The notes: generated by a model from the letters alone, not told the origin. A DNA stretch of 64,000 bases from Octopus sinensis (GCF_006345805.1 NC_042999.1:41664001-41728000), one strand, 5' to 3'. Positions 612 through 57,003 are shown, numbered from the stretch's first letter. Translations and numbers: made by a program.

Positions 612-612
612 T

Positions 613-681
613 GTTTCTTTATTAGCCACACAGGGCTGCACACAGATAGAACAAATTACAAGGTAGAGCTTTTTTTGTAGG

Positions 682-714
<33 letters not shown>

Positions 715-3532
715 AAGGAAGGGGGAGGTTCGATCAAAAGGGATCGTAAAAGGAGAGAAAGAGGACAAAAATAAGGGGGGTTAAAAAAAAAAAAAAGGGG
801 GGGGGGGGAGAGGAAAAAAAATGATCAATAGGGATCGTTATCACAGAAATGTCAATATGAAGTGTAAAGGGGAGGACAGGTGAGGTTTATCCGTGGAAAG
901 AAAAGCCTGCGGAAAAGACCACGGTAACCTCGGTCAATGAAGTCACATTTTATATTTCTTTTTTTTTTTTTTTTGCAAATAAGCAACTCTCTGTTTTCGA
1001 TTTCTGGGTTCATAGGACTATGCTCAAGGTGGCTTCGTCATTCATACGTGCCATTCTTGCTACCCATCCCATCTTTTTTAAAACATTCGCTAGACAAAAC
1101 TTGCCTCTCTACTCTCACTTTCCTTTTCAAGTGGTACTTGAAGAAGTTGATGAGAGATTGACCAGAGAGGAAAGTGTTTGTCTCCAATCCTTTCAGACGC
1201 GTCCACCAGATACATTCTTCGCCATAGCCACAAGGATGATGAAAATAGCTCTTCCTTCCCGTTTGAAGGAAGGAGGCGTGACAATATTGACGATAGACTC
1301 AGCTGATAAACCGACTCGTCCCACACGTGACAGCAGTTGTTCGACATAAGCCCACAGGTCGGAATTGTTGGACACTGAACGAGTGCGTGCAGAACGGTTT
1401 CGTCGCTCTGACCGCATCTCGGGCAGGTCGGCCCCGTGTTTCTCGAGCCGTGTCTGTAGAGCTTATCCCGAACGGGTAGCGCTTCTCGGTAGCACTGCCA
1501 GGCCAGGGATCTCTGGAAGTTGTCCATGGGCCCTGGCCCGAAAGTCGTCCCGAACAGGCGGGTCAGGTACTCCTCGTCGACGTCAGGTTCGCCCCGAGCT
1601 CGTCGTCGTACCTCCCCTCCACTAAACCCCTATAGAATGCTTTGGTTGTGTTGAAGTCACTCAAGGTCGACCCAGGACGGCAGAGTTGCTTGAGAGCAAC
1701 GCGACACTCGCGGTGCCATTCGCCCTTCCTCGGCCTCTTTTTGATCCACGACTGCAGTTCGGTCATGGAGACGAGCTGCGGGAAAGCGTGCCTCACAAAC
1801 GGCGACCACACCTGTTCACCGTCGTCTACATAGAGCCAGAGATGTCGCAGTCTCAGCGCGTGTCTGCGCATCATCAACCACGGCATGCCCAGCCCTCCTT
1901 TTAACGGGTGTTGACAGCAAATGGATCGCCTGACCATCGGGACGCATCCTTTCCACAAGAAGCGAAAGAGGATGCGTTGTAGTTTGGTGATGGTAGGGTC
2001 GGGACAAGGTACGACGGTCAGGCGGTAGTAGATGACGGACGCGATGTACGTGTTCGCCACCTCCGCTCGACCTTTTAGGGACAGTTTCCTCTCGGCCCAT
2101 TGCCGGGCGAGAGTGACCACCCTACTCGTTATCTCGTTCCAGTTCTTCTCCACTTGGAGGTCCGGACCAAACCAGACCCCGAGCAACTCAACCGGGCCGT
2201 CGGTCCAGCGTCCCACGACGGAGGCGCTGGTGGACGGCATGGGCTTGCTTCTCCAGGTGCTAGTCGCAAGCCCACTGACTTTTCCGGTTGATTTTCGCTC
2301 CTGTCACCGCTTCGTAGTTTTTCAGTGTCTCGCCGACCAGCTCGATGTGCTCGTGGCTAGACACTATGACGGTGACGTCGTCCGCGTATGCAGACACGCT
2401 CGTCCGCATCCCAATTCTCGCGGGATGCCCCTTAGAGTCGCCAGCTTCCGCAGTAGTGGCTCAAGAGTCAATACGTATAGAAGCGCCGAGAGGGGGCATC
2501 CCTGACGGACCGAACGTGCAATGTCGAAAGGTCTCGATAGATGTCCATTTACGCGAATTACCGAACGGATGCCTCTGTACAAGGCAGCTATCCAGCCGCG
2601 GAAGACGGGACCGAAACCAGCCGCTCTCAGGACTGCCTCCAAGTATCGATGGTCTACCCTATCAAAGGCTTTTGATTGATCCAAGTTGATCAGGGCCCCA
2701 CCCATGCCAGGTTCGTTAACTACCCTGTCTATGATGTAGCGCATCAGATGGAGGTTGTCATGGATGGTCCGGCCTGGCACGGCGCATGTTTGCGCTTGTC
2801 GACCAGTTTCTCGATGACAAGCGCCAACCTCTTGCTAGCACCTTGGCCAATTTTCAAGTCTGCATTAAGCAGAGTGATGGGCCTAAAGTTATCTATTACA
2901 TTTCCCTTGTTTAGATCTTTCTTCAGCAGTGTTACGGCTCCTCGGCTCACAAAACCAGGAATGCTCCCGTTTGCTGCCAGTTCAGTACACCGCCGCCAAG
3001 AGATCTCCAAACAAGTCTGGCATACAATTGTAAAGCTCGTAGGGTAGACCATCCAAACCCGGTGATTGTTCCTCGAGCATTCTGCCATCGCTTCCCGCAC
3101 TTCCGCCGCCGTGATGGCACCTTCGCAGCACCCTGCCTTTCTTGTCGAGAGTCGTGGTAGGCTATGTAGGTAGGCACTGAAGTCCACCCTACGTTCTTGC
3201 CCTCCACTCGTTCCGAACAGTCGGGCAAAATGCTGCTGAAAGGCCTCACACATTTTACTTGGCTCGAGCAATTCGCGCCCCTGTTCATCTCAGTGACCGA
3301 ATGGTGGCTTTGTTGCCCTGTTGCGCCTCTGCCACCGGGCCTCTCTCGGCTCCAACACCTTCGTTCCTTAGAGCACGCATCCTAGCTCTGACAGCACATC
3401 CTTCGTGTTTGGCGTTGAAGTGTTGGTCGAGGGCCAACCTCGCCGCCAAAACGTCGGATGCGATGCCGCTTCTAATTGCCTCTTCTAGCTTCTTAACTAG
3501 CTCACCCTCTACTCTATTTCTATCTATGGCTA
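613..3532 (-). mobile_element. 5'-truncated Tx1-clade non-LTR retrotransposon (element E1) inserted in a (GATA)n tract
   Basis: Frameshifted ORF2 pieces carry FRPITLLNADLK, LDQSKAFDRVDH, RQGCPLS, YADD and the C-terminal CPRCGQSDETVLHALVQC. The 5' end lies just after the APE domain (LAIDRNRVEGELVKK). The 3' end is AGCCCTGTGTGGCTAATAAAGAAACA. (GATA)n lies on both sides. Confidence 0.92.
1010..3532 (-). pseudogene. E1 ORF2 (RT plus C-terminal Cys/His domain), several single-base frameshifts
   Basis: ORF-track pieces 3285-3593, 2744-3271, 2364-2780, 1563-2240, 1090-1527 and 1193-1417 are colinear with element A ORF2; natural stop after ATLSIVL at 1010-1012. Confidence 0.85.

Positions 3533-3578
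<46 letters not shown>
3533..3578. repeat. (GATA)n microsatellite, 5' flank of E1
   Basis: Directly visible. Confidence 0.95.
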
Positions 3579-8720: not shown

Positions 8721-9554
8721 TATACATACTATATATACACACCACACACACACACACACACACCATATATATATAGATATATATATATATTATATATATA
8801 TATATAATATATATATACAGTATAATTAAAGCAACTGTGAGTAAAGAAATTAGCTAAGAAATGCGAGACAGCAAACTAAACAACGGAAAAATCATTTCAA
8901 AATCTATAAAGAACAGAGGTATATGTGCAAAATATAAATATGAACACGAAACAAAAATTGTACAAAATTTCCTAAAACAAGAGTGAAATTAGTTTAAAAT
9001 ATGACAAATTTCTACGCCGTATTTGTTACCTGAAATTTAAGTAAACGACTTCAAAGTCACCGAGAATTGAGGGGAAAGAAAATACTTTGATATGTGGTTG
9101 AAATGTCTAGATTCGGCACGATCAAAGAGACAGATGCGACTAATTTTATCATACTTTCTTGAAGGCGTTAGGAAACTGGTAAGAATAAAAGAATAAAAAA
9201 CTCATATTTATCAAGCGAAGTTGTGCCGACGGAAAATGATAATGATTCTCATTCACATACATATCCACATAAAGTCATCCGTGCACGTGGTATGTGTAAG
9301 AAACTGAACGAATAAGAAAAGCGACTGAATTTTACTGAAGTTTGGCAAGATTAAATTTTGATTGTAACTCATGTAGAATCAGCTCGGAATAATTTTATTT
9401 CCCTCTACCAAATAGTGTTTTGTTCTTTGCTTTGCTAAATTGCATTTTGCACTAGTGTGTTAACACCATCAACATGTACATACATACATATATATATATA
9501 TATATAGTATATATAATATATGTATGTAGCATGTATGCATATATGTATGATATA

Positions 9555-9605
<51 letters not shown>

Positions 9606-10082
9606 TAGATATATATATATATATATATATATGTGTGGGTGTGGGGTGTCTGAGAGAGTAAAGGAGAGAGAGAGAGAGTTAATGTGACTGTGTACACACA
9701 TATAATATATATGTCTTCCATTTATGTCGTTCCAAATATGAATACTAAACACAATATTACCCATATTCGTATTGCTACATAGACAGTCCATTTTTTTCAG
9801 GTGATATATATATGTATGTATGTATATTGTTTTGTATGTTGTATGAATTTATACCAGAGAATATTAATGGCTGGAATTAAAGCGGAGATTAAAGACGACT
9901 TAAGATTCACTATTATCCAACATTTTATATTTACAAATCATTCGTTATATTCAATATTTTAACGGTAACAACATTATTTAAATATTTAATGATCATTGAG
10001 TTTGAGATTAGTACGGGTGTAAAATGAAGCTCAAGGAAGTTTCATTCAGTTTCTATTAATTTTTCTTTTAAAGTATACGTTT

Positions 10083-10610
10083 GGCATTTGCCATATTCTG
10101 AACGCCACAAAGGGAATACCCTCCATCAGGCATTTGCCATATTCTGAACGCCTTACTTCCCTGAGCATACATACATTGAAACTCCTATGTCTGGCAACTG
10201 ACTTGGCAGACACCTATAAAATTATTAACAATAACTCTGAGCACCTTTTCAAACTCCACCTGTCTAACACCTGTGAACATATTTACAAAGTCAGTAAACA
10301 GTACAGCTCCCATGACTTTCGGAAACATTTTTTCACGCTAAGAGTTGCTGAAGTATGGAAGAAACTGCCGGCATCAATTGTTAGTTGTCGGAGCACTGCA
10401 TCCTTCAAAACTTCCATGCTTCCTGAGATTCGCTAACACTACACCTCATTTTCTCCCCTCCATACACACACAAGCATGTATCTAACTCATACACTGTTCA
10501 CTTTCTAGACATTTATACATTACTGCATATGCTTTATACGCACTTTTGAAAAGTTGTGGTACACCTAAGCACTGTATACAATAATTTCATTATTATTTTT
10601 ATTATTATAT
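10083..10610 (+). mobile_element. 3' end of a CR1-clade LINE with ATT-rich tail
   Basis: ORF 10134-10436 (LPYSERL...DLADTYKII...RKHFFTLRVAEVWKKLPASIVSCRSTASFKTSM) matches the CR1 ORF2 C-terminus; tail TTATTATTTTTATTATTAT; 24-bp internal duplication at 10083/10129. Confidence 0.8.
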
Positions 10611-11074
10611 TTAACAAATTTCTAATTGCAAAATTACAAATATATTTAGATAAATAACAAATGTAACCCCAGGAAAATAGTAAATCCTTAGACTTAACTA
10701 AATTCAGTATGGCATCTAACTTTTAGCATTTTTCACTTTACAACAAGCGATACTTTAAACAATGAGTTGTCAATCTTTTGAACGTCGTGGCTCAGTGGAA
10801 ATGAAATTAAATATTATTGATTTCATATGGAAAACTTTAAAATATATTCTGTTTTAACATTAAGCATGTAGAAAAGAGCACTGAAAACCATTGCTAACCT
10901 AACTTTATTAATCATATTTATGAATGATGATAGCATAACATGCTGCTCATAACGTTGAAGCATTAATATGAATTCTCTGAAGCATGTTATTTAGAAAGCC
11001 ACAGAACAATTAAATTCCTCCCGCTACCAGAAACTACGAAGGTTTATATATAAGTGTGTGTGTGTGTGTCGTGG

Positions 11075-19629: not shown

Positions 19630-20440
19630 TTAGGGGTCACACTCTCGGTTGTATGGACATGTGTTTAGAATGTCGCAGGAAGGAATAAAAACAAGATAGT
19701 TTCTTCAGGCGGAGCAAACATGTAGGACACCTAGTGTTAGTTTAGAACAAGAATGTTTAGATATATTTATAGCCTCAGTTGATTATGCATAAGAATCCAA
19801 CCAGATATTCTAGCAACTAAGGCGGCGAGCTGGCAGAAACATTAGCACGCCGGATGAAATGCTTAGCGGTATGTCGTCTGCCGTTACGTTGTGAGTTCAA
19901 ATTCCGCCGAGGTCGACTTTGCCTTTCATCTTTTTGGGGTCGATAAATTAAGTACCAGTTACGCACTGGGGTCGATATAATCGACTTAATACCTATGTCT
20001 GTCCTTGTTTGTCCCCTCTGTGTTTAGCCCCTTGTGGGTAATAAAGAAATAGATATTCTAGCAACTAGCAACACTTGCTTCTGATAGGACCCTATGAAAG
20101 AACCACATGAACGCTCCACTCCAAAGACTGTCCAGGATTAGTGGACGGGGAATATGGATAAAATACAGGAACAACGCAGCAGTTTGTCATATCAGATTTC
20201 ATAAATTCTAACGACACTTGCATCTAATCGACCCCTATGGAAGAGACACGTCAGCACTCTGCTCCTACGACCCGCTATGATTAGTGGACAGTGAAGCTGG
20301 ATAGAATACAGGAACAGCAAAAAGGTCCATTTCAGTTTCCGGAAATCCTAACGACACTTGCTTCCGATAGAACCCTTTGGAGGAGACACGTGAGAGCTCT
20401 ATTCCTGCGGACTTCCAGGAATAGGGAAGTTGAATGGATG
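19630..20440 (+). mobile_element. Decayed RTE-like LINE 3' end with its last ~140 bp triplicated, interrupted by a SINE-a
   Basis: RLYGHVFRMSQE at about 19645, and three P(D/E)IL(A/T)TLASDR.LW(R/K)RHV units (ACACTTGC anchors at 20071, 20214, 20354) resembling the RTE C-terminal A.DR..WR motif. Confidence 0.5.
19820..20050 (+). mobile_element. Complete SINE-a with a 17-bp target-site duplication
   Basis: AGATATTCTAGCAACTA at 19803-19819 and 20051-20067; B-box GAGTTCAAATTCC; tail TGTCTGTCCTTGTTTGTCCCCTCTGTGTTTAGCCCCTTGTGGGTAATAAAGAAAT. Confidence 0.92.
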
Positions 20441-23038: not shown

Positions 23039-23240
23039 AGGCGCAGGAGTGGCTGTGTGGTAAGTAGCTTGCTAGCCAACCACATAGTTCCGGGTTCAGT
23101 CCCACTGCGTGGCACCTTGGGCAAGTGTCTTCTGCTATAGCCCCGGGCCGACCAATGCCTTGTGAGTGGATTTGGTAGACGGAAACTGAAAGAAGCCTGT
23201 CGTATATATGTATATATATATATTATATATATATATATAT

Positions 23241-23271
<31 letters not shown>

Positions 23272-23474
23272 CTGTGTTTGTCCCCCTAGCATGCTTGACA
23301 ACCGATGCTTGTGTGTTTACGTCCCCGTCACTTAGCGGTTCGGCAAAAGAGACCGATAGAATAAGTACTGGGCTTACAAAGAATAAGTCCCGGGGTCGAT
23401 TTGCTCGACTAAAGGCGGTGCTCCAGCATGGCCGCAGTCAAATGACTGAAACAAGTTAAAGAGTAAAAGAGTAA
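23039..23474 (+). mobile_element. Complete tRNA-derived SINE-b (head AGGCGCAGGAGTGGCTGTGTGG) with an empty Tx1 target site
   Basis: A-box TGGCTGTGTGG, B-box GGTTCAGTCCC, central TA/TG microsatellite and AAAGAGT-repeat tail. Site 23062-23076 reads AAGTAGCTTGCTAGC. Confidence 0.9.
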
Positions 23475-33163: not shown

Positions 33164-33393
33164 TATTTCTTTATTACCCACAAGGGGCTGAACATAGAGG
33201 GGGCAAACATGGACAGACATAGGTATTAAGTCGATTATATCGACCCCAGTGCTTAACTGGTACTTAATTTATCGACCCCGAAAGGATGAAAGGCAAAGTC
33301 GACCTCGGCGGAATTTGAACTCACAACGTAACGGCAGACGAAGTACCGCTAAGCATTTCGCCCGACTTGCTAACGATTCTGCTAGCTCGCCGC
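33164..33393 (-). mobile_element. Complete SINE-a with a 16-bp TSD, nested in SINE-b
   Basis: CTTCTACTTGACAACC at 33148-33163 and 33394-33409. Confidence 0.9.
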
Positions 33394-33477
33394 CTTCTAC
33401 TTGACAACCGGTGCTGATGTGTTTACGTCCCCGTAATTAAGAAAAGAGGCCGATAGAATAACTACAAGGCTTTAAAA

Positions 33478-37072: not shown

Positions 37073-37461
37073 ATTTTTCACTCTATTACATGTTTCAGTA
37101 ATTTGACTTCGGCCATGCTGGAGCACCGCCTTTAGTCGAGAAAATCGACCCCGGGACTTATTCTTTGTAAGCCCAGTACTTATTCTATCGGTCTCTTTTG
37201 CCGAACCGCTAAGTGACGGGGACGTAAACACACCAGCATCGGTTGTCAAGCAATGCTAGGGGTACAAACACAGACACACAAACACATACACATACATACA
37301 CATATATATACATATGTATACGACAAGCTTCTTTCAGTTTCCGTCTACCAAATCCACTCACAAGGCATTGGTCGGCCCGGGGCTATAGCAGAAGACACTT
37401 GCCGAAGGTGCCACGCAGTGGGACTGAACCCCGAACCATATGGTTGGTTAGCAAGCTACTT
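37073..37461 (-). mobile_element. Body and tail of the host SINE-b split by the triple Tx1 insertion
   Basis: Matches 23062-23470 (6 differences in about 138 bp checked). B-box at 37420-37430; truncated at the target GTTAGCAAGCTACTT (37447-37461). Confidence 0.93.
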
Positions 37462-37650
37462 TATTTCATAAAATTTGCCATTTAGGCATTTACAAAGAGG
37501 GGACAAACAAGGACAGACAAATATAAAGGCTGAAGTAGCTTAACACAGTTACAATTTTCGAATGAAATTACGGATAAGATTATAAACAATGAATTTTACG
37601 AAGGCAATGTTTAAAAATATTAATGATCATGTCGAAGGACGGACACCCAG

Positions 37651-40600
37651 TCATCCGGGTAGAACCTTTACTTTCTGATCCGATAACTCCGGACACTCCA
37701 CGAATGCGTGCAAGACGGTCTCCCTATCCTGCTCACATCGCGGGCATGTCGGCGAGACGGCACTACCGTGCCTTGACAGCTTGTCGCGAACAGGTAAAGC
37801 CGCACGGAAACACTGCCAGGCCAGGGATTTCTGGTAATTATCCAGATACCCCGGCCCGAACGTCCTCCGGAACAGGTTGACCAACTGATTTTCATCGTAG
37901 CCCAGGGTCTCCCCCAAGGCGTCTTCGGACTTAATCTCCACTAACCCGCTATAGAAATCCGTGGTGGAACTCCTGTTGCCGGCGTTGCCCACCCGAGATA
38001 GTAGCTGGAGCGCCTGACGGCACTCCAAATTCCATGCACCGATGTCCGTTAGGGATGTTAACTGGGGAAGGTAGAACCGGACGTGCGGTGACCACACCTG
38101 CTCTCCATCCAGGTAAAGCCAGAGGTGCCTCAACCTTAACGCGAGTTTTCGCATCCTCAGCCAAGGTATCCCTAGCCCACCCTTTAGCGGTTTCTGGCAG
38201 CAGACAGAGCGCTTTACAAGTGGCTTTCCTCCTTTCCACAAAAATCGGAAAAGGATTCTCTCCAACTTGTTCAGCCACAAATCGGGGCAAGGCACCACGG
38301 TCAGACGGTAGGTGATTACTGATGCTATAAACATCTGCACCACCTCTGCCTTCCCTAGCAGGGATAACGCCCGCCCAGACCAGGTCTGGGTTAGAGCGGT
38401 CACCTTGTTGGCCACCTCACTCCAATTTTTCTCAATCTGGAGGTCTGGCCCGAACCAGACTCCGAGCAGCTTAACAGGACCTTCCGTCCAACGCCCTACG
38501 ACGTTATTGGACGGCATCGGCTTGCCCCTCCAGGTGCCGAGTTACAAACCGACCGACTTGTCCTTGTTAACCTTTGCTCCTGCCACCGCCTCGTAGCTTT
38601 TGATGGCCTCTTCCACCACTGGAAGCTGGCCTTCGTCTGCCACGATGATGGAGGTGTCATCCGCATACGCCGTAGCTCCTCTTCCACACCATAGATCATG
38701 CGGCGCGCCCCCTAGTGCCTCCAACTTCCGCAGCAAAGGCTCAAGAGCCAATACGTATAGGAGCGAGGACAGGGGACACCCTTGACGAACTGAACGCTCG
38801 ATCCTGAACGGCTTCGAAAAGGAACCGTTCACCTTGACTACAGACTCGATGTCGCTATACAAAGCAGCGATCCAGCCTCGAAAGGTCGGGCCTAGGCCAG
38901 CCTCTCCGAGGACCGCCGCCAGGTACCGATGGTCGACCCTATCAAATGCTTTGGACTGGTCTAAATGTACCAGTGCTCCCCCTGCGCCAGAAAGCTTCCC
39001 TACCCTCTCTAAGGAGTAGCGTATAAGGTGGAGATTGTCGTGGATCGTTCTGCCGGGGATAGCGCACGTTTGCGCATCCCCGACAAGTTTGTCCACGACC
39101 TGCGCCAACCTTTTTGCTAGCACCTTGGCCAGAATCTTTAACTCTGTGTTTAACAGAGTTATGGGCCTGAAGTTCCCTATCTCGTCCCCCTTGTTCGGGT
39201 CCTCCCTGATCAACGTCACCGCCCCCCGGCTCGCAGACTTGGGAATTCTCCCATTCTGCTGCCAGTTGGCGTAGACGCTAGCCAGCAGGTGCCCGAACAA
39301 GTCTGGCATACTTCTATAAAATTCATAGGGCAGACCATCGAGACCCGGCGACTTCTCCCTGGGGCACTTGCCCAACACCTCGATTACTTTCTCGGCTGTT
39401 ATTGGCCCTTCACAGCACTCAGCCTCTCGTGTCGAGAGGCGCGGGCCACCAGACAGGAAGTCTCTAAGGGCCTCACCATGATCCAGCGTCCCGCACCTCC
39501 CGAACAACTCGGCGAAGTGCTTGTGAAGTGCCTCACACATCTCGTCCCGCTTCTTGATCGTGCATCCGTTTTCATCAACAAGAGACCCAATTGTGGCATC
39601 GTTTCCACGCTGTGTTTCTATCGTACGGGCCCATCCGGCAACATTAATTCCCTCACGGCCCAATGCTCGTACTTTAGCCCGGACTCAACATCCCTCATGT
39701 TTGGTTTTGAGGTGACGGTCTAATGCCGTTCTCGCCGCTAAAATGTGAGATGCAGAGCCCAACCTCAACGCCTCCTCTAAGTTCTTAACTAGTTGCCCTT
39801 CTATTCTAGCCCAATCTAGTCTTAGTTGTTTACTAAATCTAATGGACTCGAATCGAATGGCTCTTTTGAGGGTGAACCACCACCGGTTATTAACCACGGC
39901 TCCGGTTAACGCCCTCTGCACTAACACCTTAATCCGGCTACGGTATGCCTCGCGTGTCAAAATAGACTTGTTCAGCTTCCAGTAGCCGGTTCCTATCTTA
40001 AGTGTGCTATCTATGTCCAGTCTACACGTGACCATTCTATGGTCAGTATAGGGCACCTGGACGAGCTGTGGACAACTAAAACTAGACTTATCTCTAGTTC
40101 TTATCACTATCCTGTCTAGGTAAGACTTGAACCTTCCGTCGCCACTCATCCAGGTCCACTCTGGGACGTTCGGATGGTCAAGTCTGTAACGATCTGCCAG
40201 CTGAAACCGCTTAAGCAGATCCACGAGACGTGAGTTCACTTTCCTATAGATCGAGCCAACGCTATCGATGTGTACGTCAACGATAGCATTAAAGTCCCCT
40301 AATATCACTAAAGTCTTCGACGTCACGAGAAAGCCCTCTAGGCGCCGATAAAAATCAGTTTGGAAGCCTCTAGCACAAGGTGCATAGAGTCCGATCAACC
40401 TGAAGGCCTTACTGCTGTATGTCACATCAAGGACGACCAGCCCACCTTCTGGGTCTACATAGCCTGTACTTGTCTGTAGAGCCAAGTCTTTACGGATCAG
40501 TACCACTTCGCCCCCTCGCCCTCCGGTCTGGCCAGGAGACATGATTTTCTCGTAGCCATTTAGGAGAGGCGAGAAGGTTTGTAGGCTGTCCAGCTTGGTC

Positions 40601-40716
40601 TCTGTAGCAACCATCACATGTATATTATGTGATCTGAGGTCGTCGAGGAAACAAGCCTGCTTCCACTTCGAACTCAGACCACGCACATTTAAACAACCAA
40701 GGTTAAGCGAAGCCAT
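37651..40716 (-). pseudogene. Element A ORF2 (APE endonuclease, RT, C-terminal Cys/His): one frame, two in-frame stops and a C-terminal deletion
   Basis: LNVRGL, VATETKL, GDFN, LDRI, TDH (APE); PGLDG, FRPITLLN, QGCPLS, YADD (RT); CPRC..ETVLHAFVEC. Stops are TGA 39685-39687 and TAA 38542-38544. About 100 aa present in E1 after the Cys/His motif are missing. Confidence 0.92.
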
Positions 40717-40733
40717 TACAAAAAGTAAAAGTT

Positions 40734-42137
40734 CTACTTACGTTTCGTTGGAGAGGTGGGGGCCGACCTCGCCACACGTTTGTTGGCCCCTTCTTTCTCC
40801 TCTTTCTTCAGATAGTCCGGCAAGTTCGCGATATGCCGGATGGCGTTTGGGTGTCTGTCTTTTAATTGTTTGAACGTTGTTTCCGCAATCCACGCGTGTC
40901 TATTTCGATCTTTGTATTTGTTGTACAGTCTTGCTGACTGATGCTGAACCACAATATCGTTTATGTATTTGTCTTGTGTGTCGAATTCAATTAATATGAG
41001 TTCATTTTCTTTTTTGTCTTCTTTTTCTGGGCCAGTTGAGCGGGATTTTTTTTTCCGTGTCTGTGGTGTGTCTTTGTTTTTATTATTTTTTGTAGGGGAT
41101 GTGGACGGGGATGCTGCACGAATTCTTTTACGAACTGGTGTAAATCCCCCCTCTGATACCTCCATGGTATCGTCTGGGGTGGCAATGGTTTGTTCGGTAG
41201 GCGCCGCAGTTTTTAGGTGGGTGGGAGGTTTTAATAGTGTAGGGGTTTGTGAGTGCGAGGGCTGGGTTTTTTCTTCAGTCTGTTTTGGGGTTGGCACCGT
41301 AACAGCGGGAGTGGGATTTTTTGTTTTTGTAGGGGTAGGTGTGTTTGCCAGGGTAGGAACTTTTTTATTATCTGAGGGGCCTGGTGTCTGCGGTTTCTTT
41401 TGCTTGTCGGGACAGTCTACACGAATGTGGCCCTTTTTGCCGCAGGCGTAACAGGTGGGTTTTCGGCCTTCGACCTGTACCCTGAGGGCTACGTTCTCGC
41501 CCACGAGCACCCTCTCAGGAAGGAGCTGCAGGTCCTCCGCTGTTCCTTGAATTAATATATTAATGTTACGCCCAAGCCAAAATCGAGGGGTAGAGCATAT
41601 TACTTCTAGTATTTTTATTTTGTCCGCCCTTTTATATAATAGGGCGGCCACTACCTCTACCGGATCGACTTCCGGCGGGGCTTCTACAATCCTGACCCGG
41701 GACGTCCTGCGTCCCCTATAGCTTGGAAAAAGTACCACCTCCTTGGTTTTTAGGGGGTTTACAGAATGCCCGCGGGCCATTTCTTCCCCCGAGAAGCGGA
41801 CATCCACTGTGCCATATGCCCGTCCCCTGGCGACGTACACGATGTCCTTCCAAATCGGGGACAGGCATTTCTCGATGGTACTTTTTTCAAAGTGTTTGAA
41901 CCTTCTGCTTTGTGGACAGAAAGTTTTAAACACTACGGTCCGCTTCTCGGTCTCCACGATACTGGCGGAGGGTGATATTTTAACATCACTACCCTCCTCT
42001 TGCATTTTTTTAAATAGCTCGACGAGCTGGTTGACATCGATGTCAATTTTCTCGGTAGCCACTGCGGCTACCTCAGAAAATTTTTTAACATTGCTCTCCT
42101 CAAGAGCACTACTTTCGTGAATAATTTCAACAGACAT
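40734..42137 (-). CDS. Element A ORF1, intact 467 aa, RRM-like region plus CX2CX4HX4C zinc knuckle
   Basis: Open frame from ATG 42137; VEGRKPTCYACGKKGHIRVDC knuckle followed by a Pro/Thr/Lys-rich linker. Confidence 0.9.
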   Translation of the reverse strand: MSVEIIHESSALEESNVKKFSEVAAVATEKIDIDVNQLVELFKKMQEEGSDVKISPSASIVETEKRTVVFKTFCPQSRRFKHFEKSTIEKCLSPIWKDIVYVARGRAYGTVDVRFSGEEMARGHSVNPLKTKEVVLFPSYRGRRTSRVRIVEAPPEVDPVEVVAALLYKRADKIKILEVICSTPRFWLGRNINILIQGTAEDLQLLPERVLVGENVALRVQVEGRKPTCYACGKKGHIRVDCPDKQKKPQTPGPSDNKKVPTLANTPTPTKTKNPTPAVTVPTPKQTEEKTQPSHSQTPTLLKPPTHLKTAAPTEQTIATPDDTMEVSEGGFTPVRKRIRAASPSTSPTKNNKNKDTPQTRKKKSRSTGPEKEDKKENELILIEFDTQDKYINDIVVQHQSARLYNKYKDRNRHAWIAETTFKQLKDRHPNAIRHIANLPDYLKKEEKEGANKRVARSAPTSPTKRK

Positions 42138-42543
42138 TATTCTGTTGAAATTAGACAACACAAAAATTACGAGTATTGGTTTCTCACAAAACTGGGAAAC
42201 CTATAGAAAGTTTTTCTTCCAAAGTAGTTCAAAAAAGCAGTTCAAAAATTCCAATTCCCACCCCCATTCGGGGGAGGGGCACGAAAATAGTTTGGCAGGA
42301 CTATGTATAGTCACGTAAATAAAAAGCCACAGTGGCTAACAGTTCAACGGTAAGAAATTATTCAATTATTTCCCGGTAAAACCGGAGAACAAGACAGTTC
42401 AGCAACGTTTAAAGGCAAATTTTCAGTAGTAGGAATTCAACGATTAACAACACAGCAAAACTCTTACCGGGAAGAAAACGCGTCCACACCGTAGTACGGT
42501 AAGCAAAGTCACTCTTCTGTCAGTGAGGTTAGCAAAGCTACTT

Positions 42544-44509
42544 TATTTTATATAATTTGCCACTAGGGCAGCACACAGAGTAGTAGCTACGGGCTGGACA
42601 AGGACATTAATGGATGATGGTGGTGGTGGATGAAGATGGTGATGGGAGAAGTCGAAAGCGCCCGCCGACTTTCGCTTCTCTAAAACAATGTTTCAATAAA
42701 TACATTTAATAAAATGTTCAAAAAATGTTCAACAATTCTTCTCGTCAGGTCCCCGAAGCAAATTGTCTTGCCGCCTGCAGACAACTCTGCGACGACAAGT
42801 CGGGGCCTGCAAAGAGAAAGGTAAAGTCTTTCTTTTCAAAGGTCTCTGCGACCCTTGACAAAGTATCTTCTGTTACTTTTTCCGCAGCTACCTGCGGAGG
42901 CCATAACGGACTCCTTGTGCCGACCGTGTCCTTACGCTCTCGGTCACCCAAGCCATTCAAGAATCTTTCAACCTCCTCTCCCTTGTGGTAAAGGAGGAGA
43001 AGCATCTCCTCTTCACAGGGAGGGACCTCACACTGCTCCGTCAGTGGCACACTTCCTACTGGCGGAGCCTTGTCCGCGGGTGGCACACATCCCACCCGCG
43101 GCTCCGTCGGCGACACAGAAACGTCAGTCGTCCGACCTCTCCTTTTTCTCCTCCTTCTTTTGGGGGAGACTGCTGACCCAGGGGACTCCGTCACCAGACA
43201 CGGGGGATTGCTATCCCCCTTCGCCCCTGAGCGTTCTTGGCGGGCAACCATTGTTGCTCGCCTTTCTCTTTCTTTTCGTGGAGGCAACCTCCTCCACGAC
43301 TTCCATCGTCTCCCCCTCCAATGAGGGGGCGGCGGGCGCCTTTTCCCCTCTCTGCTCCGGGGCACCACCACGGCCCCTGGGACAATTCCTCCTGATATGT
43401 CCGGGCTTCAGGCACAGGTGACACTTGGGGGGGCGACCCTCGAGTATCACCGGGTACCTGTGCCCAGCCATTCTCAGGAAGTCCGGGAATTTCATTTCCC
43501 CCACGGCTACCGGTGTCCACAGGCTCAAAGTTGCCCTCGACCCCTGCCAGGCGACCGCGGGAGCCACCTTCACACTCAGCAGTCTGGGTCCGCTATCCCC
43601 CAGGCCTCGCCGGATGGTCTTCTCGATCCATTCCGCCTCCGTGCCCGGGGGCAGCTCACACACCCAGGCTCTTTTCACTTTTCTGCCACAATACGAGGGG
43701 AGGAACAAAATTTCCTCTCCCTCCAGTGGCTCGCTAGCAAATCTGCTAGCTTCCTCGGGGGTACCAACAGCAACCAGACCGTTGCAAATTTAGTCCCCGA
43801 GAAATAATTTTATAGTTGGCAGGTATTCCCCCAACTCTTTCTCTATAGTATTCCTGTCGAAGAGGGCAATGGCTCCACGCGACCTAGAATAGGTTCGTAG
43901 GACCACCGTCCTCTTCTCAAGACTTTCAATCCACTGCTTGGGTGGGACGACCTCCCATTCCAAAGCGGTGGTTTCTTTTGTTGCCAGGTTTTTTTTTTTT
44001 TTTTTTAAATAAATGTATTTAGAATAAAACTAAAAAACGAGAAGAAAAGGAAATCCGAAGAAAGTCACAATGAAAAACGGAGAGAGTCAAATAAAGTTGA
44101 AAAGAAAGTCAAATAAAGTTAAAAAGAAAGTCAAAAACACAGCAAAATCCTTTTGGCCATTTGGTACTCCCGGCCTAAATCGAACCAGGATCGCACAACT
44201 TCCACATAAATTGGTGTAAAATTGGTAGTTCTTCACAGCACCATACAATTTTCACAATTCGAAGACGGATACGCCCCCAAAAATTTTCTCAGCGAGAAAA
44301 ATATATCTGCCACATGTCGGCAGAATCAGAATTCTGAATCCAGTAGGACTTCCTGCATGTAAAAAATAATTCTCAACAAAAACTCCCACTGGACCCAGAA
44401 AACAGAATCTTACCTTACATGGGGCTTCCAAAGTTTCAATTCAAGACGGCTTCAAAAGCACATCTTCACTGCTTCAGCAGCAAACACAACACTGACTCGC
44501 ACATGCGCA
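42544..44509 (-). mobile_element. Element B: ORF1-only non-autonomous Tx1 relative, 1.97 kb
   Basis: Bounded by target duplications 42528-42543 and 44510-44524. About 520-nt 5'UTR, an ORF1 homolog, a ~200-nt 3'UTR ending TGCCCTAGTGGCAAATTATATAAAATAAA, and no APE or RT. Confidence 0.87.
42745..43987 (-). pseudogene. Element B ORF1 with a few frameshifts, some in homopolymer runs
   Basis: EKRTVVLRTY, LFLPSYCGRK and LEGRPPKCHLCLKPGHIRRNC align with ORF1 of A and C; start ambiguous after a poly-A run. Confidence 0.8.
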
Positions 44510-44524
44510 GTTAGCAAGCTACTT

Positions 44525-46030
44525 TATTTCAACTATTTTGCCATAAAGGCATTACATAGAGGGGACACTACAAAAACATGTGGGGACATATAACAATTAA
44601 AAATAAAATGGTACTGTGAGTGACATGAAAATGAACGTGAGAAAATAAATTAAGTTTATGATAACATGCATGATATCTGAAAATGAAGTATGAAATATGA
44701 CGAGTGTGCTACTCACCCCACTTTGAGCAACACCACTCGCTGCCTTTGAGTCTGAATTCTTCTCTAATCTCTGGTCTAGTCCTTCTTTTTCCATTCTCGC
44801 TATCACTTAAAGACAACTTTCTTTCGCAACCTTTTTCACCGGGGGAGGGGTTTTCTGAATTCTGTGGTGTCTGCTCTTTTTTCTTTTTCTTTTTTTCTTG
44901 TGGGGAAAGGGAGTGGGTGGGTCTGGTGTCTGTATGGGGCGGGTGGGTCTGAGTGGTCTTGGGTGGGATGGAGTTGGACTGGGGTACCATTTCACACTCA
45001 GTGTTCTTTCTTTTCTTCCTCTTCTTACTTCTGCTCTCTGCTACTATCCATTCTTCCTCCTTTCGTCCGTCTTTGTCTTCGTCCTCTTTTTTCTTCTTTG
45101 TCTCCGCAACTGGTTCATCTATTTTTTCCTCTTTTTCTTCTGTAGGGGGCAGTGTGCTCTTTTTCTTCTGTAGGGGGCAGTGTGCTCTAATGTGGCCTTT
45201 TTGGCCACATTTAAAGCACCGCGGGGTTCTGCCTTCTACCCATACTCTCAGTACCATTTCTCCCACTGACACCGTTTCCGCCAAATTTTCCAGCTCCTTC
45301 GCCTCCGCTTGTATGGTCATTTCCAGTAGTTTTCCTTTGTAACTTCTTTCCTCTGTCTCTGTGGCTTGGAGGACAGTCACCTCCTCACTTCCAACGAGGA
45401 CGGCTGCCGCAACCCAAGCCACCTTTATGTCAGGTGGAATTCCTTCTACCCTCACCTTAGAATTTTTTCTTCCAAGATAAGAGGGTAGAAGCAGCAGTTC
45501 CTCAGCTTTTACGGTTGCACTTGCCAGCCTTCTCGCCTCCTCCTCTGTTTTAAACTGGACAACCACCGTCCCATATCCGCTTCCGTTTGCTATGTATGTT
45601 ACTTCGTTCGAAAGCCCCTTGAGAGCTTTTTCTATTTTTTCCATATTCATCTGCTCCACTCTCCTACTCTCCACTGAGTGCGCCTTGTAGGTGATGGTTT
45701 TTCTTTCCATATTCATCATGACCGTTTTCGGGGGTAGTAACTTTACGTCACTTCCCACCTTCTGTGTCATCTTATACAGCTCCTTCAGTTCAGTCAGGTC
45801 CACTTCCTTTCTCTTCACTCCCGGCGCGTCAGCAAAACTCTTCATTTTCTCCAAATGTTGGTCCATCCTGTTCACCGCCTTAACGAGCTCCTCCTCAGAT
45901 GTGGACAGCTCGTACTCGCTAAGGTCCGAATACATTATTTTCCACTCGCCAACAAACCGCTGGCGAGCAGCTCAAAGGATTCTGTCCGCCTAGTCAAAAC
46001 TTGACACAGTAAACAACTCGACGCATGCGC
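44525..46030 (-). mobile_element. Element C: ORF1-only non-autonomous Tx1 relative, 1.51 kb
   Basis: Bounded by target duplications 44510-44524 and 46031-46045; 95-nt 5'UTR, intact ORF1, and 184-nt 3'UTR ending TGCCTTTATGGCAAAATAGTTGAAATAAA. Confidence 0.9.
44709..45935 (-). CDS. Element C ORF1, intact 408 aa, RRM-like region plus CCHC knuckle
   Basis: ERKTITY, GYGTV, LLPSYLGRK and VEGRTPRCFKCGQKGHIRAHC; homologous to but clearly divergent from ORF1 of A and B. Confidence 0.88.
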   Translation of the reverse strand: MYSDLSEYELSTSEEELVKAVNRMDQHLEKMKSFADAPGVKRKEVDLTELKELYKMTQKVGSDVKLLPPKTVMMNMERKTITYKAHSVESRRVEQMNMEKIEKALKGLSNEVTYIANGSGYGTVVVQFKTEEEARRLASATVKAEELLLLPSYLGRKNSKVRVEGIPPDIKVAWVAAAVLVGSEEVTVLQATETEERSYKGKLLEMTIQAEAKELENLAETVSVGEMVLRVWVEGRTPRCFKCGQKGHIRAHCPLQKKKSTLPPTEEKEEKIDEPVAETKKKKEDEDKDGRKEEEWIVAESRSKKRKKRKNTECEMVPQSNSIPPKTTQTHPPHTDTRPTHSLSPQEKKKKKKEQTPQNSENPSPGEKGCERKLSLSDSENGKRRTRPEIREEFRLKGSEWCCSKWGE

Positions 46031-46068
46031 GTTAGCAAGCTACTTACCACACAGCCACTCCTGCGCCT
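46031..46068 (-). mobile_element. Head (A-box) of the host SINE-b
   Basis: Minus strand AGGCGCAGGAGTGGCTGTGTGGTAAGTAGCTTGCTAAC joins seamlessly to 37446 when A, B, C and the extra TSDs are removed. Confidence 0.93.
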
Positions 46069-49930: not shown

Positions 49931-51069
49931 AACAAGCCATTACTTCTATGCCGAGAGTTCATTTACTTTGTTTCTTTTTACTGTCTCCCCTCCCATATAA
50001 ATGTATATATATATATCCGTGCATGTGTGTGTGTGTGTCTATGTGACTATGTGTTTGTGTTAGTGCGCGCACGCGTGTCTATGAAGGGTTGCTAAAAAGA
50101 ACCTTGCTTTAAGGGTGTCGTGAAAGGCCTCCCTGGTGGCCCTACCTTCTTATAGGGCTAAGAAAAACTGAAAAACTGAAGGAATTCTGCAATAATTGTA
50201 TGAATCTGAGAGGAGAATATGTTGCATAAAATCATAATTAATTGATAAACATTATCAGTTTCTCTGTTTCAATATATGTGTGCTATTAAATCTCTAAAGT
50301 TGCAGTATTTTGTCTAAGCATGTATACTTCTAAAGAAGCAGAGTATACCTCAGTTGGAAGGGGTCACAAAAACATTGACTGGTCACATATTTTGAATGCA
50401 TCTTTTTAAATATGTATATGTAGATGCATACATAAAATTTTATTTCCAAGATTATAACAAAGAATTATTTTATATGCGACTTCGCTAATAAATAGAAAAA
50501 TGTTGAAAAGAAACAGTGCTTTTAATTAACAGAATTCAATCATTAAGCATTCATAATTGGATTGAATATTAATAAATAATATTAATAAATATTAATAAAT
50601 AATATTAATATTAATATTAATATTAATAAATATTAATAAATAATATCAATGAATAAATATTAAGTATTTATGGAATTCTGATTTACTGTCGGGTGACTTT
50701 TGGCCAACCCTGTATATTCGTGATATCCCTTTTGTCGGTAACATAGACAGTGCATATCACATGTGATGGTGAGGCATCTGTAAAATAATTCTAAAATATT
50801 TGTACAGTAGTTTCACCTTGTATATTAGTGATAAACAAAATGAAAGTACACATGGATTTTGTTTCCAATATATAAATTAAATTCAAACGGAATCATATTC
50901 GTAAGTTTTGGTAACCTGATGTTTTAGTAGGTATCTTCCTTGTTTGCTGCTTTGAATGTTGAACACTCCAAAAGGAAGTTCCTTTCTCTTAATTGCAATA
51001 ATGGACGCAGTTCATTCAACTATCATCCCCATTCTCAATATTAAACATGGAAAACTCAAGTACACATAT

Positions 51070-51288
51070 ATTTCTTTACTACCCACAAGGGGCTAAACAC
51101 AGAGGGGACAAACAAGGACAGACAAACGGATTAAGTCGATTATATCTACCCTAGTGCGTAACTGGTACTTAATTTATCGACCCCGAAAGGATGACAGACA
51201 AAGTCGACCTCGGCGTAATTTGAACTCAGAACGTAACGGCAGACGAAATACGGCTACGCATTTCGCTAACGTTTCTGCCAGCTCGTAC
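51070..51288 (-). mobile_element. SINE-a copy
   Basis: Tail AGAGGGGACAAACAAGGACAGACAAA is identical to the element A 3'UTR (26 nt). Confidence 0.88.
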
Positions 51289-51749: not shown

Positions 51750-52065
51750 CGCAACTGGTACTTAATTTATCGAACCCGAAAGGATGAAATGCAAAGTGCA
51801 CCTCGGCGGAATTTGAACTCAAAACCTAAAGACAGATGAAATACCTATTTCTTTATTACCCACAAGGGGCTAAACATAGAGGGGACAAACATGGACAGAC
51901 AGATTATATCGACCCCAGTGCTTAACTGGTACTTAATTTATCGACCCCGAAAGGATGAAAGGCAAAGTCGACCTCGGCGGAATTTGAACTCACAACGTAA
52001 CGGCAGCCGAAATACCGCTAAGCATTTCGCCCGACGTGCTAACGATGCTGCCAGGTCGCCGCCTT
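51750..52065 (-). mobile_element. SINE-a inserted into another SINE-a
   Basis: GAAATACC at 51838-51845 and 52009-52016 flanks an inner copy 51846-52008. Confidence 0.75.
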
Positions 52066-56523: not shown

Positions 56524-56690
56524 GAGGTACTTCTTTCAGTTTCCATCTACTACATCCACTCACGGGGGTTTGGTCAGCTCGAACGTATAGTAGACGACAC
56601 TTGCACAAGGAGCCACGCAATGGGACTGAACATAGAACCATGTAGATAGGAAGCAAGCGTCTTACCTCAGAGCGACGCCTGCGTCTATAG
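56520..56690 (-). mobile_element. Old SINE-b 5' half
   Basis: Head GCAGGCGTCGCTCTGAGGTAAGACGCTTGCTTCC...GTTCAGTCCC; target site diverged (4 mismatches). Confidence 0.7.
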
Positions 56691-57003
56691 CTCCTTACTA
56701 CACAACCACGATATATATATATTTATTTATTTATTGTCTTCGTCTATCGTTTCAAATTACTGTTGTTTCCTTTCGCACGTACTCCCTGAATTATTATCTT
56801 TCCCGAGCCCTAATGCTACGCAAAACTTGCGGGTACCGCCGATATACGAAGTTCTTAGTCTTATGATTAAGGGCATGAAACTAGGTATTAGCATTTTCGG
56901 TCGATAACTGATGAAAAATTAGGGTCCTGACGTCTGTCCTACGTAAACGTTTAGTAATATTTAATGCATTATTCATTTATATATATATATTTGTGTATGT
57001 ATG

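What the first reader, a model, noticed from the sequence alone, without database searches (positions are those of the whole stretch)
37073..46068. Three different Tx1-type elements stacked at one site inside a tRNA-derived SINE: a SINE-targeting, sequence-specific retrotransposon system
Seen: removing 37462-46045 restores an intact SINE-b. The same 15-bp target duplication GTTAGCAAGCTACTT bounds all three same-strand inserts (37447, 42528 with +1 A, 44510, 46031), separating the pol III A-box (46047-46057) from the B-box (37420-37430) by about 8.6 kb. The host SINE is young (6 differences in ~138 bp from 23039-23474), so all three lineages were recently active. Known: Tx1-clade families are often target-specific (Keno-U2 snRNA, Mutsu-5S rRNA, Dewa-tRNA arrays, Kibi/Koshi-microsatellites, Xenopus Tx1L into Tx1D). 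Inference: these elements use an abundant SINE head as a renewable safe landing site, and each TSD regenerates the target. I know of no description of this in cephalopods but could not search.
Basis: partly seen in the sequence, partly recalled or inferred. Interest (0 to 1): 0.93.

Follow-up and report, generated by a model that had tools for sequence, protein, structure and literature searches.

The report
Retrotransposons stacked inside one SINE site
Three unrelated-looking copies of an L1/Tx1-type jumping gene (one full-length, two that carry only the first gene) sit head-to-tail at exactly the same 15-base site inside an octopus SINE, which shows site-specific insertion of a kind already known from Tx1 elements of frogs, fish and crocodiles, here with a SINE as the landing pad.

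Summary
On the minus strand, a SINE-b head is followed by the 15-mer AAGTAGCTTGCTAAC, element C, the 15-mer, element B, the 15-mer with one extra base, element A, the 15-mer, and the rest of SINE-b. Joining the flanks restores an intact SINE.

- Only A (5,066 bp) is autonomous-type. It has an RRM/CCHC ORF1 and an APE-RT-zinc-finger ORF2 with two in-frame stops.
- B (degraded) and C (intact 408-aa ORF1) are ORF1-only elements with no ORF2.

The three share only a ~45-nt 3' tail ending AAATA.

Best reading: sequence-specific target-primed insertion that duplicates, and so regenerates, the 15-bp target. B and C were probably mobilised in trans by an A-type ORF2 protein.

Independent support:
- An Octopus sinensis locus holds a related ORF1-only element in the head of a different SINE (SINE-a), with a 17-21 bp duplication.
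- Another relative in this window sits inside a (CTAT)n microsatellite.

Not tested: a genome-wide tally of flanks (no octopus genome was reachable) and Tx1-clade phylogeny.

Tx1 families that target transposons, with tandem copies sandwiching a ~16-bp duplication, are already described in crocodilians. This is therefore a new member of a known kind, with a new target class.

The parts
46046..46068 (-). 5' part of the host SINE-b head, including the A-box-like TGGCTGTGTGG (46047-46057)
   Evidence: 100% match to positions 1-36 of the SINE-b copy at 23039; sequence read
46031..46045 (-). Target-site copy 1 (AAGTAGCTTGCTAAC on the minus strand)
   Evidence: exact match
44525..46030 (-). Element C, 1,506 bp, ORF1-only non-autonomous LINE: 95-nt 5' UTR starting GCGCATGCG, intact ORF1 (45935..44709, 408 aa, tandem RRM-like domains plus a CCHC knuckle), 184-nt 3' UTR ending ...GGCAAAATAGTTGAAATA; no ORF2
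   Evidence: no ORF2 homology; structure model and Foldseek matches to tandem-RRM proteins
44510..44524 (-). Target-site copy 2
   Evidence: exact match
42544..44509 (-). Element B, 1,966 bp, degraded ORF1-only LINE: 5' end TGCGCATGTGCG, ORF1 remnant 43951..43142 with frameshifts and stops (24-30% aa identity to the A and C ORF1s), 3' tail ...TGCCCTAGTGGCAAATTATATAAAATA; no ORF2
42528..42543 (-). Target-site copy 3, 16 nt with one extra base (AAGTAGCTTTGCTAAC on the minus strand)
37462..42527 (-). Element A, 5,066 bp, full-length autonomous-type L1/Tx1-group LINE: 390-nt 5' UTR; ORF1 42137..40734 (467 aa, CCHC); ORF2 40716..37651 (APE endonuclease, RT with YADD, zf-RVT), interrupted by two in-frame stops at 39687..39685 and 38544..38542; 3' tail with a TGCC-N5-GGCA hairpin ending ...TTTTATGAAATA
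   Evidence: best solved-structure matches are human LINE-1 ORF2p for both EN and RT
37447..37461 (-). Target-site copy 4
   Evidence: exact match
37073..37446 (-). Remainder of the host SINE-b (B-box-like GGTTCAGTCCC at 37420-37430, body, internal microsatellite, tail)
   Evidence: 88.5% over 408 nt to the copy at 23039-23474; alignment
23039..23474 (+). Uninterrupted SINE-b copy that shows the empty site (target 23062-23076, one mismatch)

Best explanation
This is a nested tandem array made by repeated, sequence-specific, target-primed reverse transcription into one 15-bp site in the promoter head of an octopus SINE (SINE-b).

Inferred mechanism:
- An A-type ORF2 protein (L1-like APE endonuclease plus RT) nicks the bottom strand opposite GGT^AAG.
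- It primes cDNA synthesis on the conserved 3' tail (small hairpin, A/T-rich stretch, terminal AAATA).
- The top strand is cut 15 nt downstream (CTAAC^CAACC).
- Every insertion is therefore flanked by AAGTAGCTTGCTAAC and offers two fresh targets to the next element.

A is the autonomous type. This copy was inactivated by two nonsense codons. B and C encode only an RRM/CCHC ORF1 protein, so they must have been mobilised in trans by an ORF2 protein with this same specificity, with which they share the 3' tail.

Shown: the anatomy, the domain content, the identical junctions and a second SINE-head insertion in another species. Inferred: which protein supplies the specificity, the nick order, trans-mobilisation, and that most genomic copies sit in this site.
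For: - Four copies of the 15-mer bound three co-oriented inserts, and removing the inserts restores the SINE.
- The inserts are unrelated at the DNA level except for a ~45-nt tail, and their ORF1s are 24-38% identical. They are therefore independent insertions, not a duplication.
- A has Exo_endo_phos, RVT_1 and zf-RVT domains. It matches human L1 ORF2p best (EN 7.6e-12, RT 2.9e-36). The EN motifs (N10, E39, GDFN, TDH) and YADD can be read.
- B and C have ORF1 only. C ORF1 models as tandem RRMs plus CCHC.
- In O. sinensis CM016880.1, element D is a 1.6-kb ORF1-only relative (44% aa identity to C). It sits in the head of SINE-a in the same orientation, with TSD (CA)GAAAYGTTAGCACGCCG. The joined flanks align full-length to neighbouring SINE-a copies.
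- A 58%-identical relative in the window (E2, 612-3532) is flanked on both sides by (CTAT)n. The group as a whole therefore behaves in a target-specific way.
- Published Tx1 precedent: a 16-bp TSD, tandem copies sandwiching a TSD, and shared targets for LINE and non-autonomous partners (PMC4494074).
Against: - There is only one locus per family. No other genomic copies of A, B or C could be retrieved.
- SINE-a carries a 3' tail clearly homologous to A's (22 identical nt). Yet it inserts at unrelated sites with 14-16 bp TSDs. A closely tailed ORF2 protein in this genome is therefore not site-specific, and tail-sharing alone does not prove a shared endonuclease.
- Other SINE-b heads in the window and in L003 (about 8) are unoccupied.
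- The 3' hairpin is thermodynamically weak (z = -3.0 for A and not significant for B, C and D).
- This A copy is itself dead.
Confidence: 0.75

Rival explanations
1. Targeting is real but is not set by endonuclease sequence recognition. In one version, the elements are guided to SINE heads by RNA polymerase III factors bound to the A and B boxes, as in Dictyostelium TRE elements or yeast Ty3. In another, read-through transcripts carrying downstream SINE sequence anneal to other SINE-b copies.
For: Two different SINE families are hit within their pol III promoter heads, in the same orientation as the SINE. SINE-a shares the LINE tail but inserts anywhere, which would fit an endonuclease without strong specificity. 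Elements sitting co-oriented in a SINE would produce read-through 3' ends homologous to other copies.
Against: The A box occupies the same coordinates (12-22) in both SINEs, yet the nick positions differ: after nt 23 and 38 in SINE-b, and after nt 14-16 and 33-35 in SINE-a (read). The position is therefore not measured from the promoter boxes. A relative targets a (CTAT)n microsatellite that has no pol III promoter. Known pol III-guided elements insert outside the transcribed region. Three of three junctions are exact to the nucleotide.
Confidence: 0.12
2. Each family inserts site-specifically, but the stack was not built by three insertions at this locus. It arose by unequal or ectopic recombination, or gene conversion, between different SINE-b copies that each carried one insert.
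For: SINE-b is abundant and copies are ~96% identical in the head, which gives recombination substrates. The middle target copy carries a 1-nt insertion.
Against: Only 15 bp separate neighbouring elements, too little homology for efficient recombination. Sequential insertion into a regenerated TSD is the documented route for tandem Tx1-type copies (PMC4494074). This rival also still requires site-specific insertion.
Confidence: 0.06
3. The array is an assembly artefact, or a chance pile-up of non-specific LINE insertions.
For: No read-level data could be examined. Repeat-rich octopus assemblies are error-prone.
Against: A 15-bp overlap is far too short to cause mis-joins. The flanks rejoin into one SINE with consistent divergence. 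Three random insertions at the same bond with the same TSD length in a gigabase genome are effectively impossible. An analogous structure exists in an independent assembly of another species.
Confidence: 0.03

Closest known systems
Tx1-Mar LINEs and SINEU in crocodilians (Kojima 2015, PMC4494074)
   Same: APE-type LINEs insert at a defined site inside another abundant transposon. The TSD is ~16 bp. Tandem copies sandwich a TSD through sequential insertion. Non-autonomous partners share the LINE's target.
   Different: The target there is a Mariner DNA transposon, here the promoter head of a SINE. The partners there are snRNA-headed SINEs, here ORF1-coding internally deleted LINEs. Clade membership of the octopus elements was not tested.
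Xenopus Tx1L in Tx1D; Keno (U2), Mutsu (5S), Dewa (tRNA-Leu spacer) (cited in PMC4494074, PMC3706591)
   Same: Sequence-specific L1-group LINEs that live in multicopy, dispensable targets. Tx1L endonuclease specificity has been shown in vitro (Christensen et al. 2000, as cited).
   Different: None of these listed targets is a SINE. Dewa sits in a spacer between tRNA genes, not inside a pol III-transcribed unit.
Kibi/Koshi and crocodilian (TTCC)n/(TTTC)n Tx1 families
   Same: The window's relative E2 (612-3532) is flanked on both sides by one microsatellite, (CTAT)n.
   Different: The repeat unit is different. This concerns E2, not A, B or C. Only a single copy was seen.
HAL1 ('half-L1', Bao and Jurka 2010, cited in PMC4494074)
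   Same: Non-autonomous LINE derivatives that keep ORF1 and the 3' end but lack ORF2, and depend on a partner's ORF2 protein.
   Different: HAL1 derives from mammalian L1 and inserts without sequence specificity. C and D have RRM+CCHC ORF1s and sit in specific SINE sites. The ORF1-only layout is shared by lineages only 44% identical, which suggests long persistence.
Dada DNA transposons (PMC3706591)
   Same: They exploit multicopy small-RNA-type sequences as safe targets.
   Different: Dada elements are DNA transposons with a different mechanism, and they target genuine tRNA/snRNA genes rather than SINE copies.

Membership tests
L1-group (L1/Tx1) APE-type non-LTR retrotransposon | ORF2 with an N-terminal APE endonuclease, an RT, and a C-terminal Cys-rich zinc-binding motif | tested here: met
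   Pfam Exo_endo_phos 4.8e-10, RVT_1 8.2e-28, zf-RVT 3e-9. The best PDB sequence matches are human LINE-1 ORF2p for both EN and RT, well ahead of R2.
L1-group (L1/Tx1) APE-type non-LTR retrotransposon | ORF1 protein with RRM domain(s) plus a CCHC knuckle (the non-mammalian type) | tested here: met
   zf-CCHC found in the A and C ORF1s. The AlphaFold model of C ORF1 has two beta-alpha-beta-beta-alpha-beta domains (pLDDT 70-86) that match tandem-RRM proteins (E~1e-4, prob 1.0).
Tx1 clade (as opposed to L1 proper) | RT-domain phylogeny or RTclass1 placement among Tx1 reference elements | not testable with these tools
   No Tx1 reference sequences were retrievable. Indirect only: L1-Tx1 is the only L1-like superfamily reported as active in Octopus vulgaris (PMC13282606).
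Sequence-specific (target-specific) LINE | Independent copies share the same insertion point and TSD, and tandem copies sandwich the TSD | tested here: met
   Three dissimilar elements and four copies of the 15-mer at one site.
Sequence-specific (target-specific) LINE | A large share of all genomic copies (more than 20% in Kojima's criterion) is flanked by the same target | not testable with these tools
   No octopus genome could be scanned. Exact-protein look-ups and a junction scan found nothing. The one related locus retrieved (D in O. sinensis) is in a SINE head.
Sequence-specific (target-specific) LINE | The element's endonuclease cleaves the target sequence specifically | not testable with these tools
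   This needs a biochemical assay.
ORF1-only non-autonomous LINE (HAL1-like) | Retains the 5' end, ORF1 and the partner-like 3' tail, and lacks ORF2 | tested here: met
   C, B and D have no tblastn match to ORF2. The tails align with A's. B and C share the 5' terminus (T)GCGCATG.
ORF1-only non-autonomous LINE (HAL1-like) | A multi-copy family amplified in trans | tested here: inconclusive
   Only single copies were seen. Homologous ORF1 proteins exist in O. sinensis and O. bimaculoides and in two unnamed metaclust entries.
tRNA-derived SINE (host element) | Pol III A and B boxes with tRNA-like spacing | tested here: met
   TGGCTGTGTGG at nt 12-22 and GGTTCAGTCCC at nt 55-65 of the rejoined SINE, compared by eye with the consensus TRGCNNAGTGG / GGTTCGANNCC recalled from general knowledge.
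tRNA-derived SINE (host element) | Recognisable tRNA homology or cloverleaf | tested here: not met
   ARAGORN finds no tRNA in the window. The Rfam tRNA model does not hit SINE-b or SINE-a even at E<=10. tRNA origin of octopus SINEs is a published claim (Ohshima and Okada 1994, cited in PMC9223172).
Pol III-factor-guided retrotransposons (Dictyostelium TRE, Ty3 type) | Insertion at a set distance outside the pol III-transcribed unit, independent of local sequence | tested here: not met
   The insertions lie inside the unit between or within the boxes, at different offsets from an identically placed A box in SINE-a and SINE-b.

The most novel reading that the evidence does not exclude
Octopus genomes may carry a radiation of target-specific L1/Tx1-group LINEs that have divided the repeat landscape into niches: the SINE-b head, the SINE-a head and (CTAT)n microsatellites. 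The radiation would include old, protein-coding ORF1-only lineages that borrow the autonomous element's endonuclease. The same LINE group also donated the 3' tail of the very abundant SINE-a. LINEs and SINEs would then parasitise each other reciprocally: the SINE uses the LINE's machinery, and the LINE uses SINE heads as safe, self-renewing landing pads and disables their pol III promoters.
Probability: 0.3. Interest if true: 0.65.

Novelty: new member of a known kind. Interest (0 to 1): 0.45.

Why it matters
If a genome-wide survey confirms it, this adds SINEs to the list of Tx1-type target classes. That list already holds snRNA and rRNA genes, a tRNA-gene spacer, satellites, microsatellites, DNA transposons and LTR elements.

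It would also give a clean natural example of three things:
- a LINE that uses a SINE as habitat, the reverse of the usual dependence;
- ORF1-only 'half' elements that inherit a partner's site specificity;
- insertions that split the SINE's A and B boxes and so silence the copies they occupy.

SINEs make up about 12% of octopus genomes, and L1-Tx1 families are reported as recently active (PMC13282606). This bears on current arguments about transposon ecology in cephalopods. A 15-bp-specific L1-type endonuclease is also a useful comparator for work on how these nucleases read DNA.

Tried and rejected
1. Exact-protein look-ups of C ORF1 and A ORF1, to find other genomic copies: not on record.
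2. Homology searches:
   - A ORF2 gave only 12 hits, the best 63% identical on a 3-kb contig that ends before the 3' tail.
   - C ORF1 and an ORF1 profile gave four proteins, of which only P0014 could be placed on DNA.
3. Junction scan of JGI metagenome contigs with AAATAAAGTAGCTTGCTAAC: no match. I did not use the second scan, because no octopus-like proteins from JGI appeared in any search.
4. Relatives at 40-42% identity in an ENA long-read assembly (L004, L005) and in TARA contigs (L002): their flanks are not homologous to each other or to the octopus SINEs, so they say nothing about SINE targeting.
5. tRNA origin of the SINE heads by ARAGORN and Rfam: negative.
6. A conserved 3' hairpin as a recognition element: plausible for A and C (TGCC-N5-GGCA) but energetically weak, not significant for B and D, and without covariation.
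7. Supplement of the 2026 O. vulgaris repeat paper, checked for consensus sequences: there are none.
8. Literature searches for a SINE-targeting Tx1 or LINE in cephalopods or elsewhere: none found in the held library. This is absence in that library only; Repbase/Dfam could not be consulted.
9. A chance or duplication origin of the array: rejected because A, B and C are dissimilar.


Full report

Yes. The 15-mer GTTAGCAAGCTACTT occurs exactly at 37447, 44510 and 46031 on the + strand. Allowing two mismatches, the only other matches are two uninterrupted SINE-b copies at 23062 and 28496. Shuffled sequence gives 0.14 matches on average, against 5 observed. A fourth copy with one extra base lies at 42528-42543.

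Read on the minus strand, the order is:
- SINE-b head (46068..46046);
- AAGTAGCTTGCTAAC;
- element C (46030..44525);
- the 15-mer;
- element B (44509..42544);
- AAGTAGCTTTGCTAAC;
- element A (42527..37462);
- the 15-mer;
- the rest of SINE-b (37446..37073).

Joining the two flanks in a script gives a complete SINE-b. It aligns from first to last base with the copy at 23039-23474, with 6 mismatches in the first 165 nt and 9 in the last 167.

**2. What are the three inserts?**

*Element A* (5,066 bp) is a full-length LINE.
- ORF1 is 467 aa with a CCHC knuckle.
- After a 17-nt spacer comes a 1,021-codon ORF2 with Exo_endo_phos, RVT_1 and zf-RVT domains.
- The ORF2 frame is continuous but has two in-frame stops, at 39687..39685 and 38544..38542.
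- Its endonuclease and RT match human LINE-1 ORF2p best among all solved structures (7.6e-12 and 2.9e-36, against ~1e-20 for R2 proteins).
- The L1-type catalytic motifs (N10, E39, GDFN, TDH) and YADD can be read in the translation. Assigning those motifs rests on my knowledge of L1 endonuclease.

*Elements B and C* are not full LINEs.
- tblastn with A's ORF2 finds nothing in either.
- C (1,506 bp) consists of a 95-nt leader, an intact 408-aa ORF1 and a 184-nt 3' UTR.
- B (1,966 bp) has a frameshifted, stop-ridden ORF1 remnant (43951..43142) between long untranslated stretches.
- C's ORF1 models as an N-terminal helix followed by two RRM-like domains at pLDDT 70-86, then the CCHC knuckle. Foldseek returns tandem-RRM proteins.

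*How the three compare.*
- The ORF1 proteins are only 24-38% identical.
- At the DNA level, only a 44-nt terminal stretch links A and C, and B matches neither.
- A multiple alignment shows a common 3' tail...GTCCCCTCTnTGT..TGCC-N5-GGCA-A/T-rich-AAATA.
- B and C also begin with the same (T)GCGCATG(C/T)G.

The array is therefore one autonomous-type element plus two ORF1-only, 'half-LINE' elements. All three are complete at both ends.

**3. Is it site-specific insertion?**

Three independent, dissimilar elements share the same orientation, the same junction nucleotide and the same 15-bp duplication. Non-specific integration into a gigabase genome cannot explain that. A 15-bp overlap cannot mislead an assembler either.

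I looked for further copies but no octopus genome could be scanned with the tools available. One related locus could be fetched. P0014 is an annotated Octopus sinensis protein, 42% identical to C ORF1, on chromosome scaffold CM016880.1.
- The element there (D, L003:~9460-11057) is again ORF1-only (~1.6 kb, 384-aa ORF1, 44% identical to C).
- It lies in the head of a different SINE family (SINE-a), in the SINE's orientation.
- It is bounded by (CA)GAAACGTTAGCACGCCG upstream and (CA)GAAATGTTAGCACGCCG downstream.
- Joining its flanks restores a full SINE-a that aligns along its whole length with the neighbouring copy.

A further relative lies in the window itself. E2 (612-3532, minus strand) is 58% identical to A's ORF2 at the protein level, 5'-truncated and degraded. 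It has (ATAG)n at 528-611 and at 3533-3578, so it sits inside a (CTAT)n microsatellite.

This LINE group thus shows three different, precise target types. That is the hallmark reported for the Tx1 clade (PMC4494074).

**4. How it most likely works**

*Shown:* the junctions, the TSD length, the domain content and the shared tail.

*Inferred:*
- The APE domain of an A-type ORF2 protein nicks the bottom strand opposite GGT^AAG.
- The RT primes on the tail that ends AAATA.
- The top strand is cut 15 nt downstream (CTAAC^CAACC).
- Repair duplicates the 15-mer, so each insertion leaves two intact targets and arrays can grow.

B and C have no enzyme of their own yet occupy the identical site. The economical reading is that they were mobilised in trans by an ORF2 protein of A's specificity and recognised through the shared tail. 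This parallels SINEU and Tx1-Mar, which share a target (PMC4494074).

One consequence is visible in the sequence. Any insertion separates the SINE's A and B boxes and should abolish its pol III promoter.

**5. What weakens the case**

- There is one locus per family.
- SINE-a carries a tail clearly homologous to A's, with 22 consecutive identical bases. Yet its copies have 14-16 bp TSDs at unrelated sites, for example GATATTCTAGCAACTA and GGTTGTCAAGTAGA. At least one ORF2 protein that recognises this tail type is therefore not site-specific, and tail similarity alone does not prove that A's enzyme moved B and C.
- About eight other SINE-b heads in the window and in L003 are empty.
- The tail hairpin is energetically marginal and shows no covariation.

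**6. Rivals**

*Guidance by pol III factors, or by read-through homology.* This would explain why two SINE heads are hit. Against it, the A box occupies nt 12-22 in both SINEs while the cuts fall after nt 23 and 38 in SINE-b and after nt 14-16 and 33-35 in SINE-a. A relative also targets a microsatellite that has no pol III promoter. I give this about 0.12.

*Recombination between singly occupied SINE-b copies.* This needs more homology than 15 bp, and it still presupposes site specificity (0.06).

*Artefact or chance* (0.03).

**7. Comparison with what is known**

The closest described system is crocodilian Tx1-Mar with SINEU. Those are Tx1 LINEs and their non-autonomous partners, inserted at a defined position in a Mariner transposon with a 16-bp TSD. 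Tandem copies 'sandwiching a TSD' are attributed there to sequential insertion (PMC4494074).

Published Tx1-type targets include:
- a piggyBac derivative (Tx1D), Mariner, Harbinger and LTR elements;
- U2 and U5 snRNA genes and 5S rRNA genes;
- satellites and microsatellites;
- the spacer of tRNA-Leu genes (PMC4494074, PMC3706591).

I found no report of a SINE as target, nor of ORF1-only Tx1-type elements, in four literature searches. L1-Tx1 families are listed as recently active in O. vulgaris, without mention of targets (PMC13282606). Repbase and Dfam could not be checked.

On membership:
- L1-group features were tested and met.
- Tx1-clade placement by RT phylogeny was not testable.
- The genome-wide criterion for 'target-specific' was not testable.
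- The 'tRNA-derived' label for the host SINE is not supported by ARAGORN or Rfam. It rests on the A and B boxes and on published work (Ohshima and Okada 1994, cited in PMC9223172).

**8. Verdict**

In kind it is a known behaviour of Tx1-type LINEs with a new target class, so I rate it a new member of a known kind and of moderate interest (0.45). The broader picture hinted at here would be more interesting, but it needs the genome-wide survey. That picture is a guild of target-specific lineages partitioning SINE-a heads, SINE-b heads and a microsatellite, together with a SINE that borrowed the same LINE tail.

Noticed in passing
window 612-3532 (minus), flanks 528-611 and 3533-3578: E2 is a degraded, 5'-truncated relative of A (58% aa identity in ORF2). 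Its 3' tail is ...CTGTGTGCAGCCCTGTGTGGCTAATAAAGAAACATAT. It is flanked on both sides by the same (ATAG)n/(CTAT)n microsatellite, which looks like a microsatellite-targeting lineage of the Kibi/Koshi type.
   Followed up: partly
window 5-264 (minus) and 243-461 (plus): An RT fragment (ORF2 aa 524-610) is cut by the window edge. Its 5'-truncated end abuts, head to head, a SINE-a that begins inside its A box (CTGGAAGAAACGTTAGCACGCCGG), close to the site used by element D in O. sinensis. It may be an antisense insertion into a SINE-a head. The 3' end lies outside the window.
   Followed up: partly
window 19819-20037 (+), 33231-33396 (-), 51067-51266 (-), 51902-52065 (-), 395-461 (+): SINE-a copies end in a ~55-nt tail homologous to the 3' tails of A, B, C and D, with 22 nt identical to A. 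They have 14-16 bp TSDs at unrelated sites. SINE-a therefore appears to be a tail partner of this LINE group but is not site-specific.
   Followed up: partly
L003:9441-11074 (Octopus sinensis CM016880.1): The annotated gene LOC118767527 (P0014) is the C-terminal part of the ORF1 of a 1.6-kb ORF1-only LINE inserted in a SINE-a head. The full ORF starts at L003:9575, 142 codons upstream of the annotated start.
   Followed up: yes
window 46021-46030 and 44498-44509 (minus-strand 5' ends of C and B): Both ORF1-only elements start with (T)GCGCATG(C/T)G. From memory, this resembles the palindromic NRF1 site GCGCATGCGC and might be part of an internal promoter. This was not tested.
   Followed up: no
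window 56640-56700 (minus): A SINE-b-like head fragment (GTGGTTGTGTAGTAAGGAGCT) stops 8 nt into the equivalent of the 15-mer. A complete new SINE head (ATAGACGCAGG...) follows it directly: a SINE nested in a SINE head near the same region.
   Followed up: no
window 37651-37760 (minus), 3' end of A ORF2: A's ORF2 ends about 10 residues after the last residue that aligns with E2 (A ORF2 aa 1011). E2's ORF continues on past that point, and the homologue P0002 is 1,148 aa against A's 1,021. This copy or family may therefore have lost a C-terminal segment.
   Followed up: no
L004:5798-9977 and L005:5391-9584 (ENA ERZ21867824): Two 78%-identical copies of a LINE 40-42% identical to A's ORF2 lie in long contigs of a 'metagenome' assembly, presumably host DNA of a marine animal. 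Both end ...GGTATTTTGGTGATTG and have unrelated flanks, so this lineage is apparently not site-specific.
   Followed up: partly
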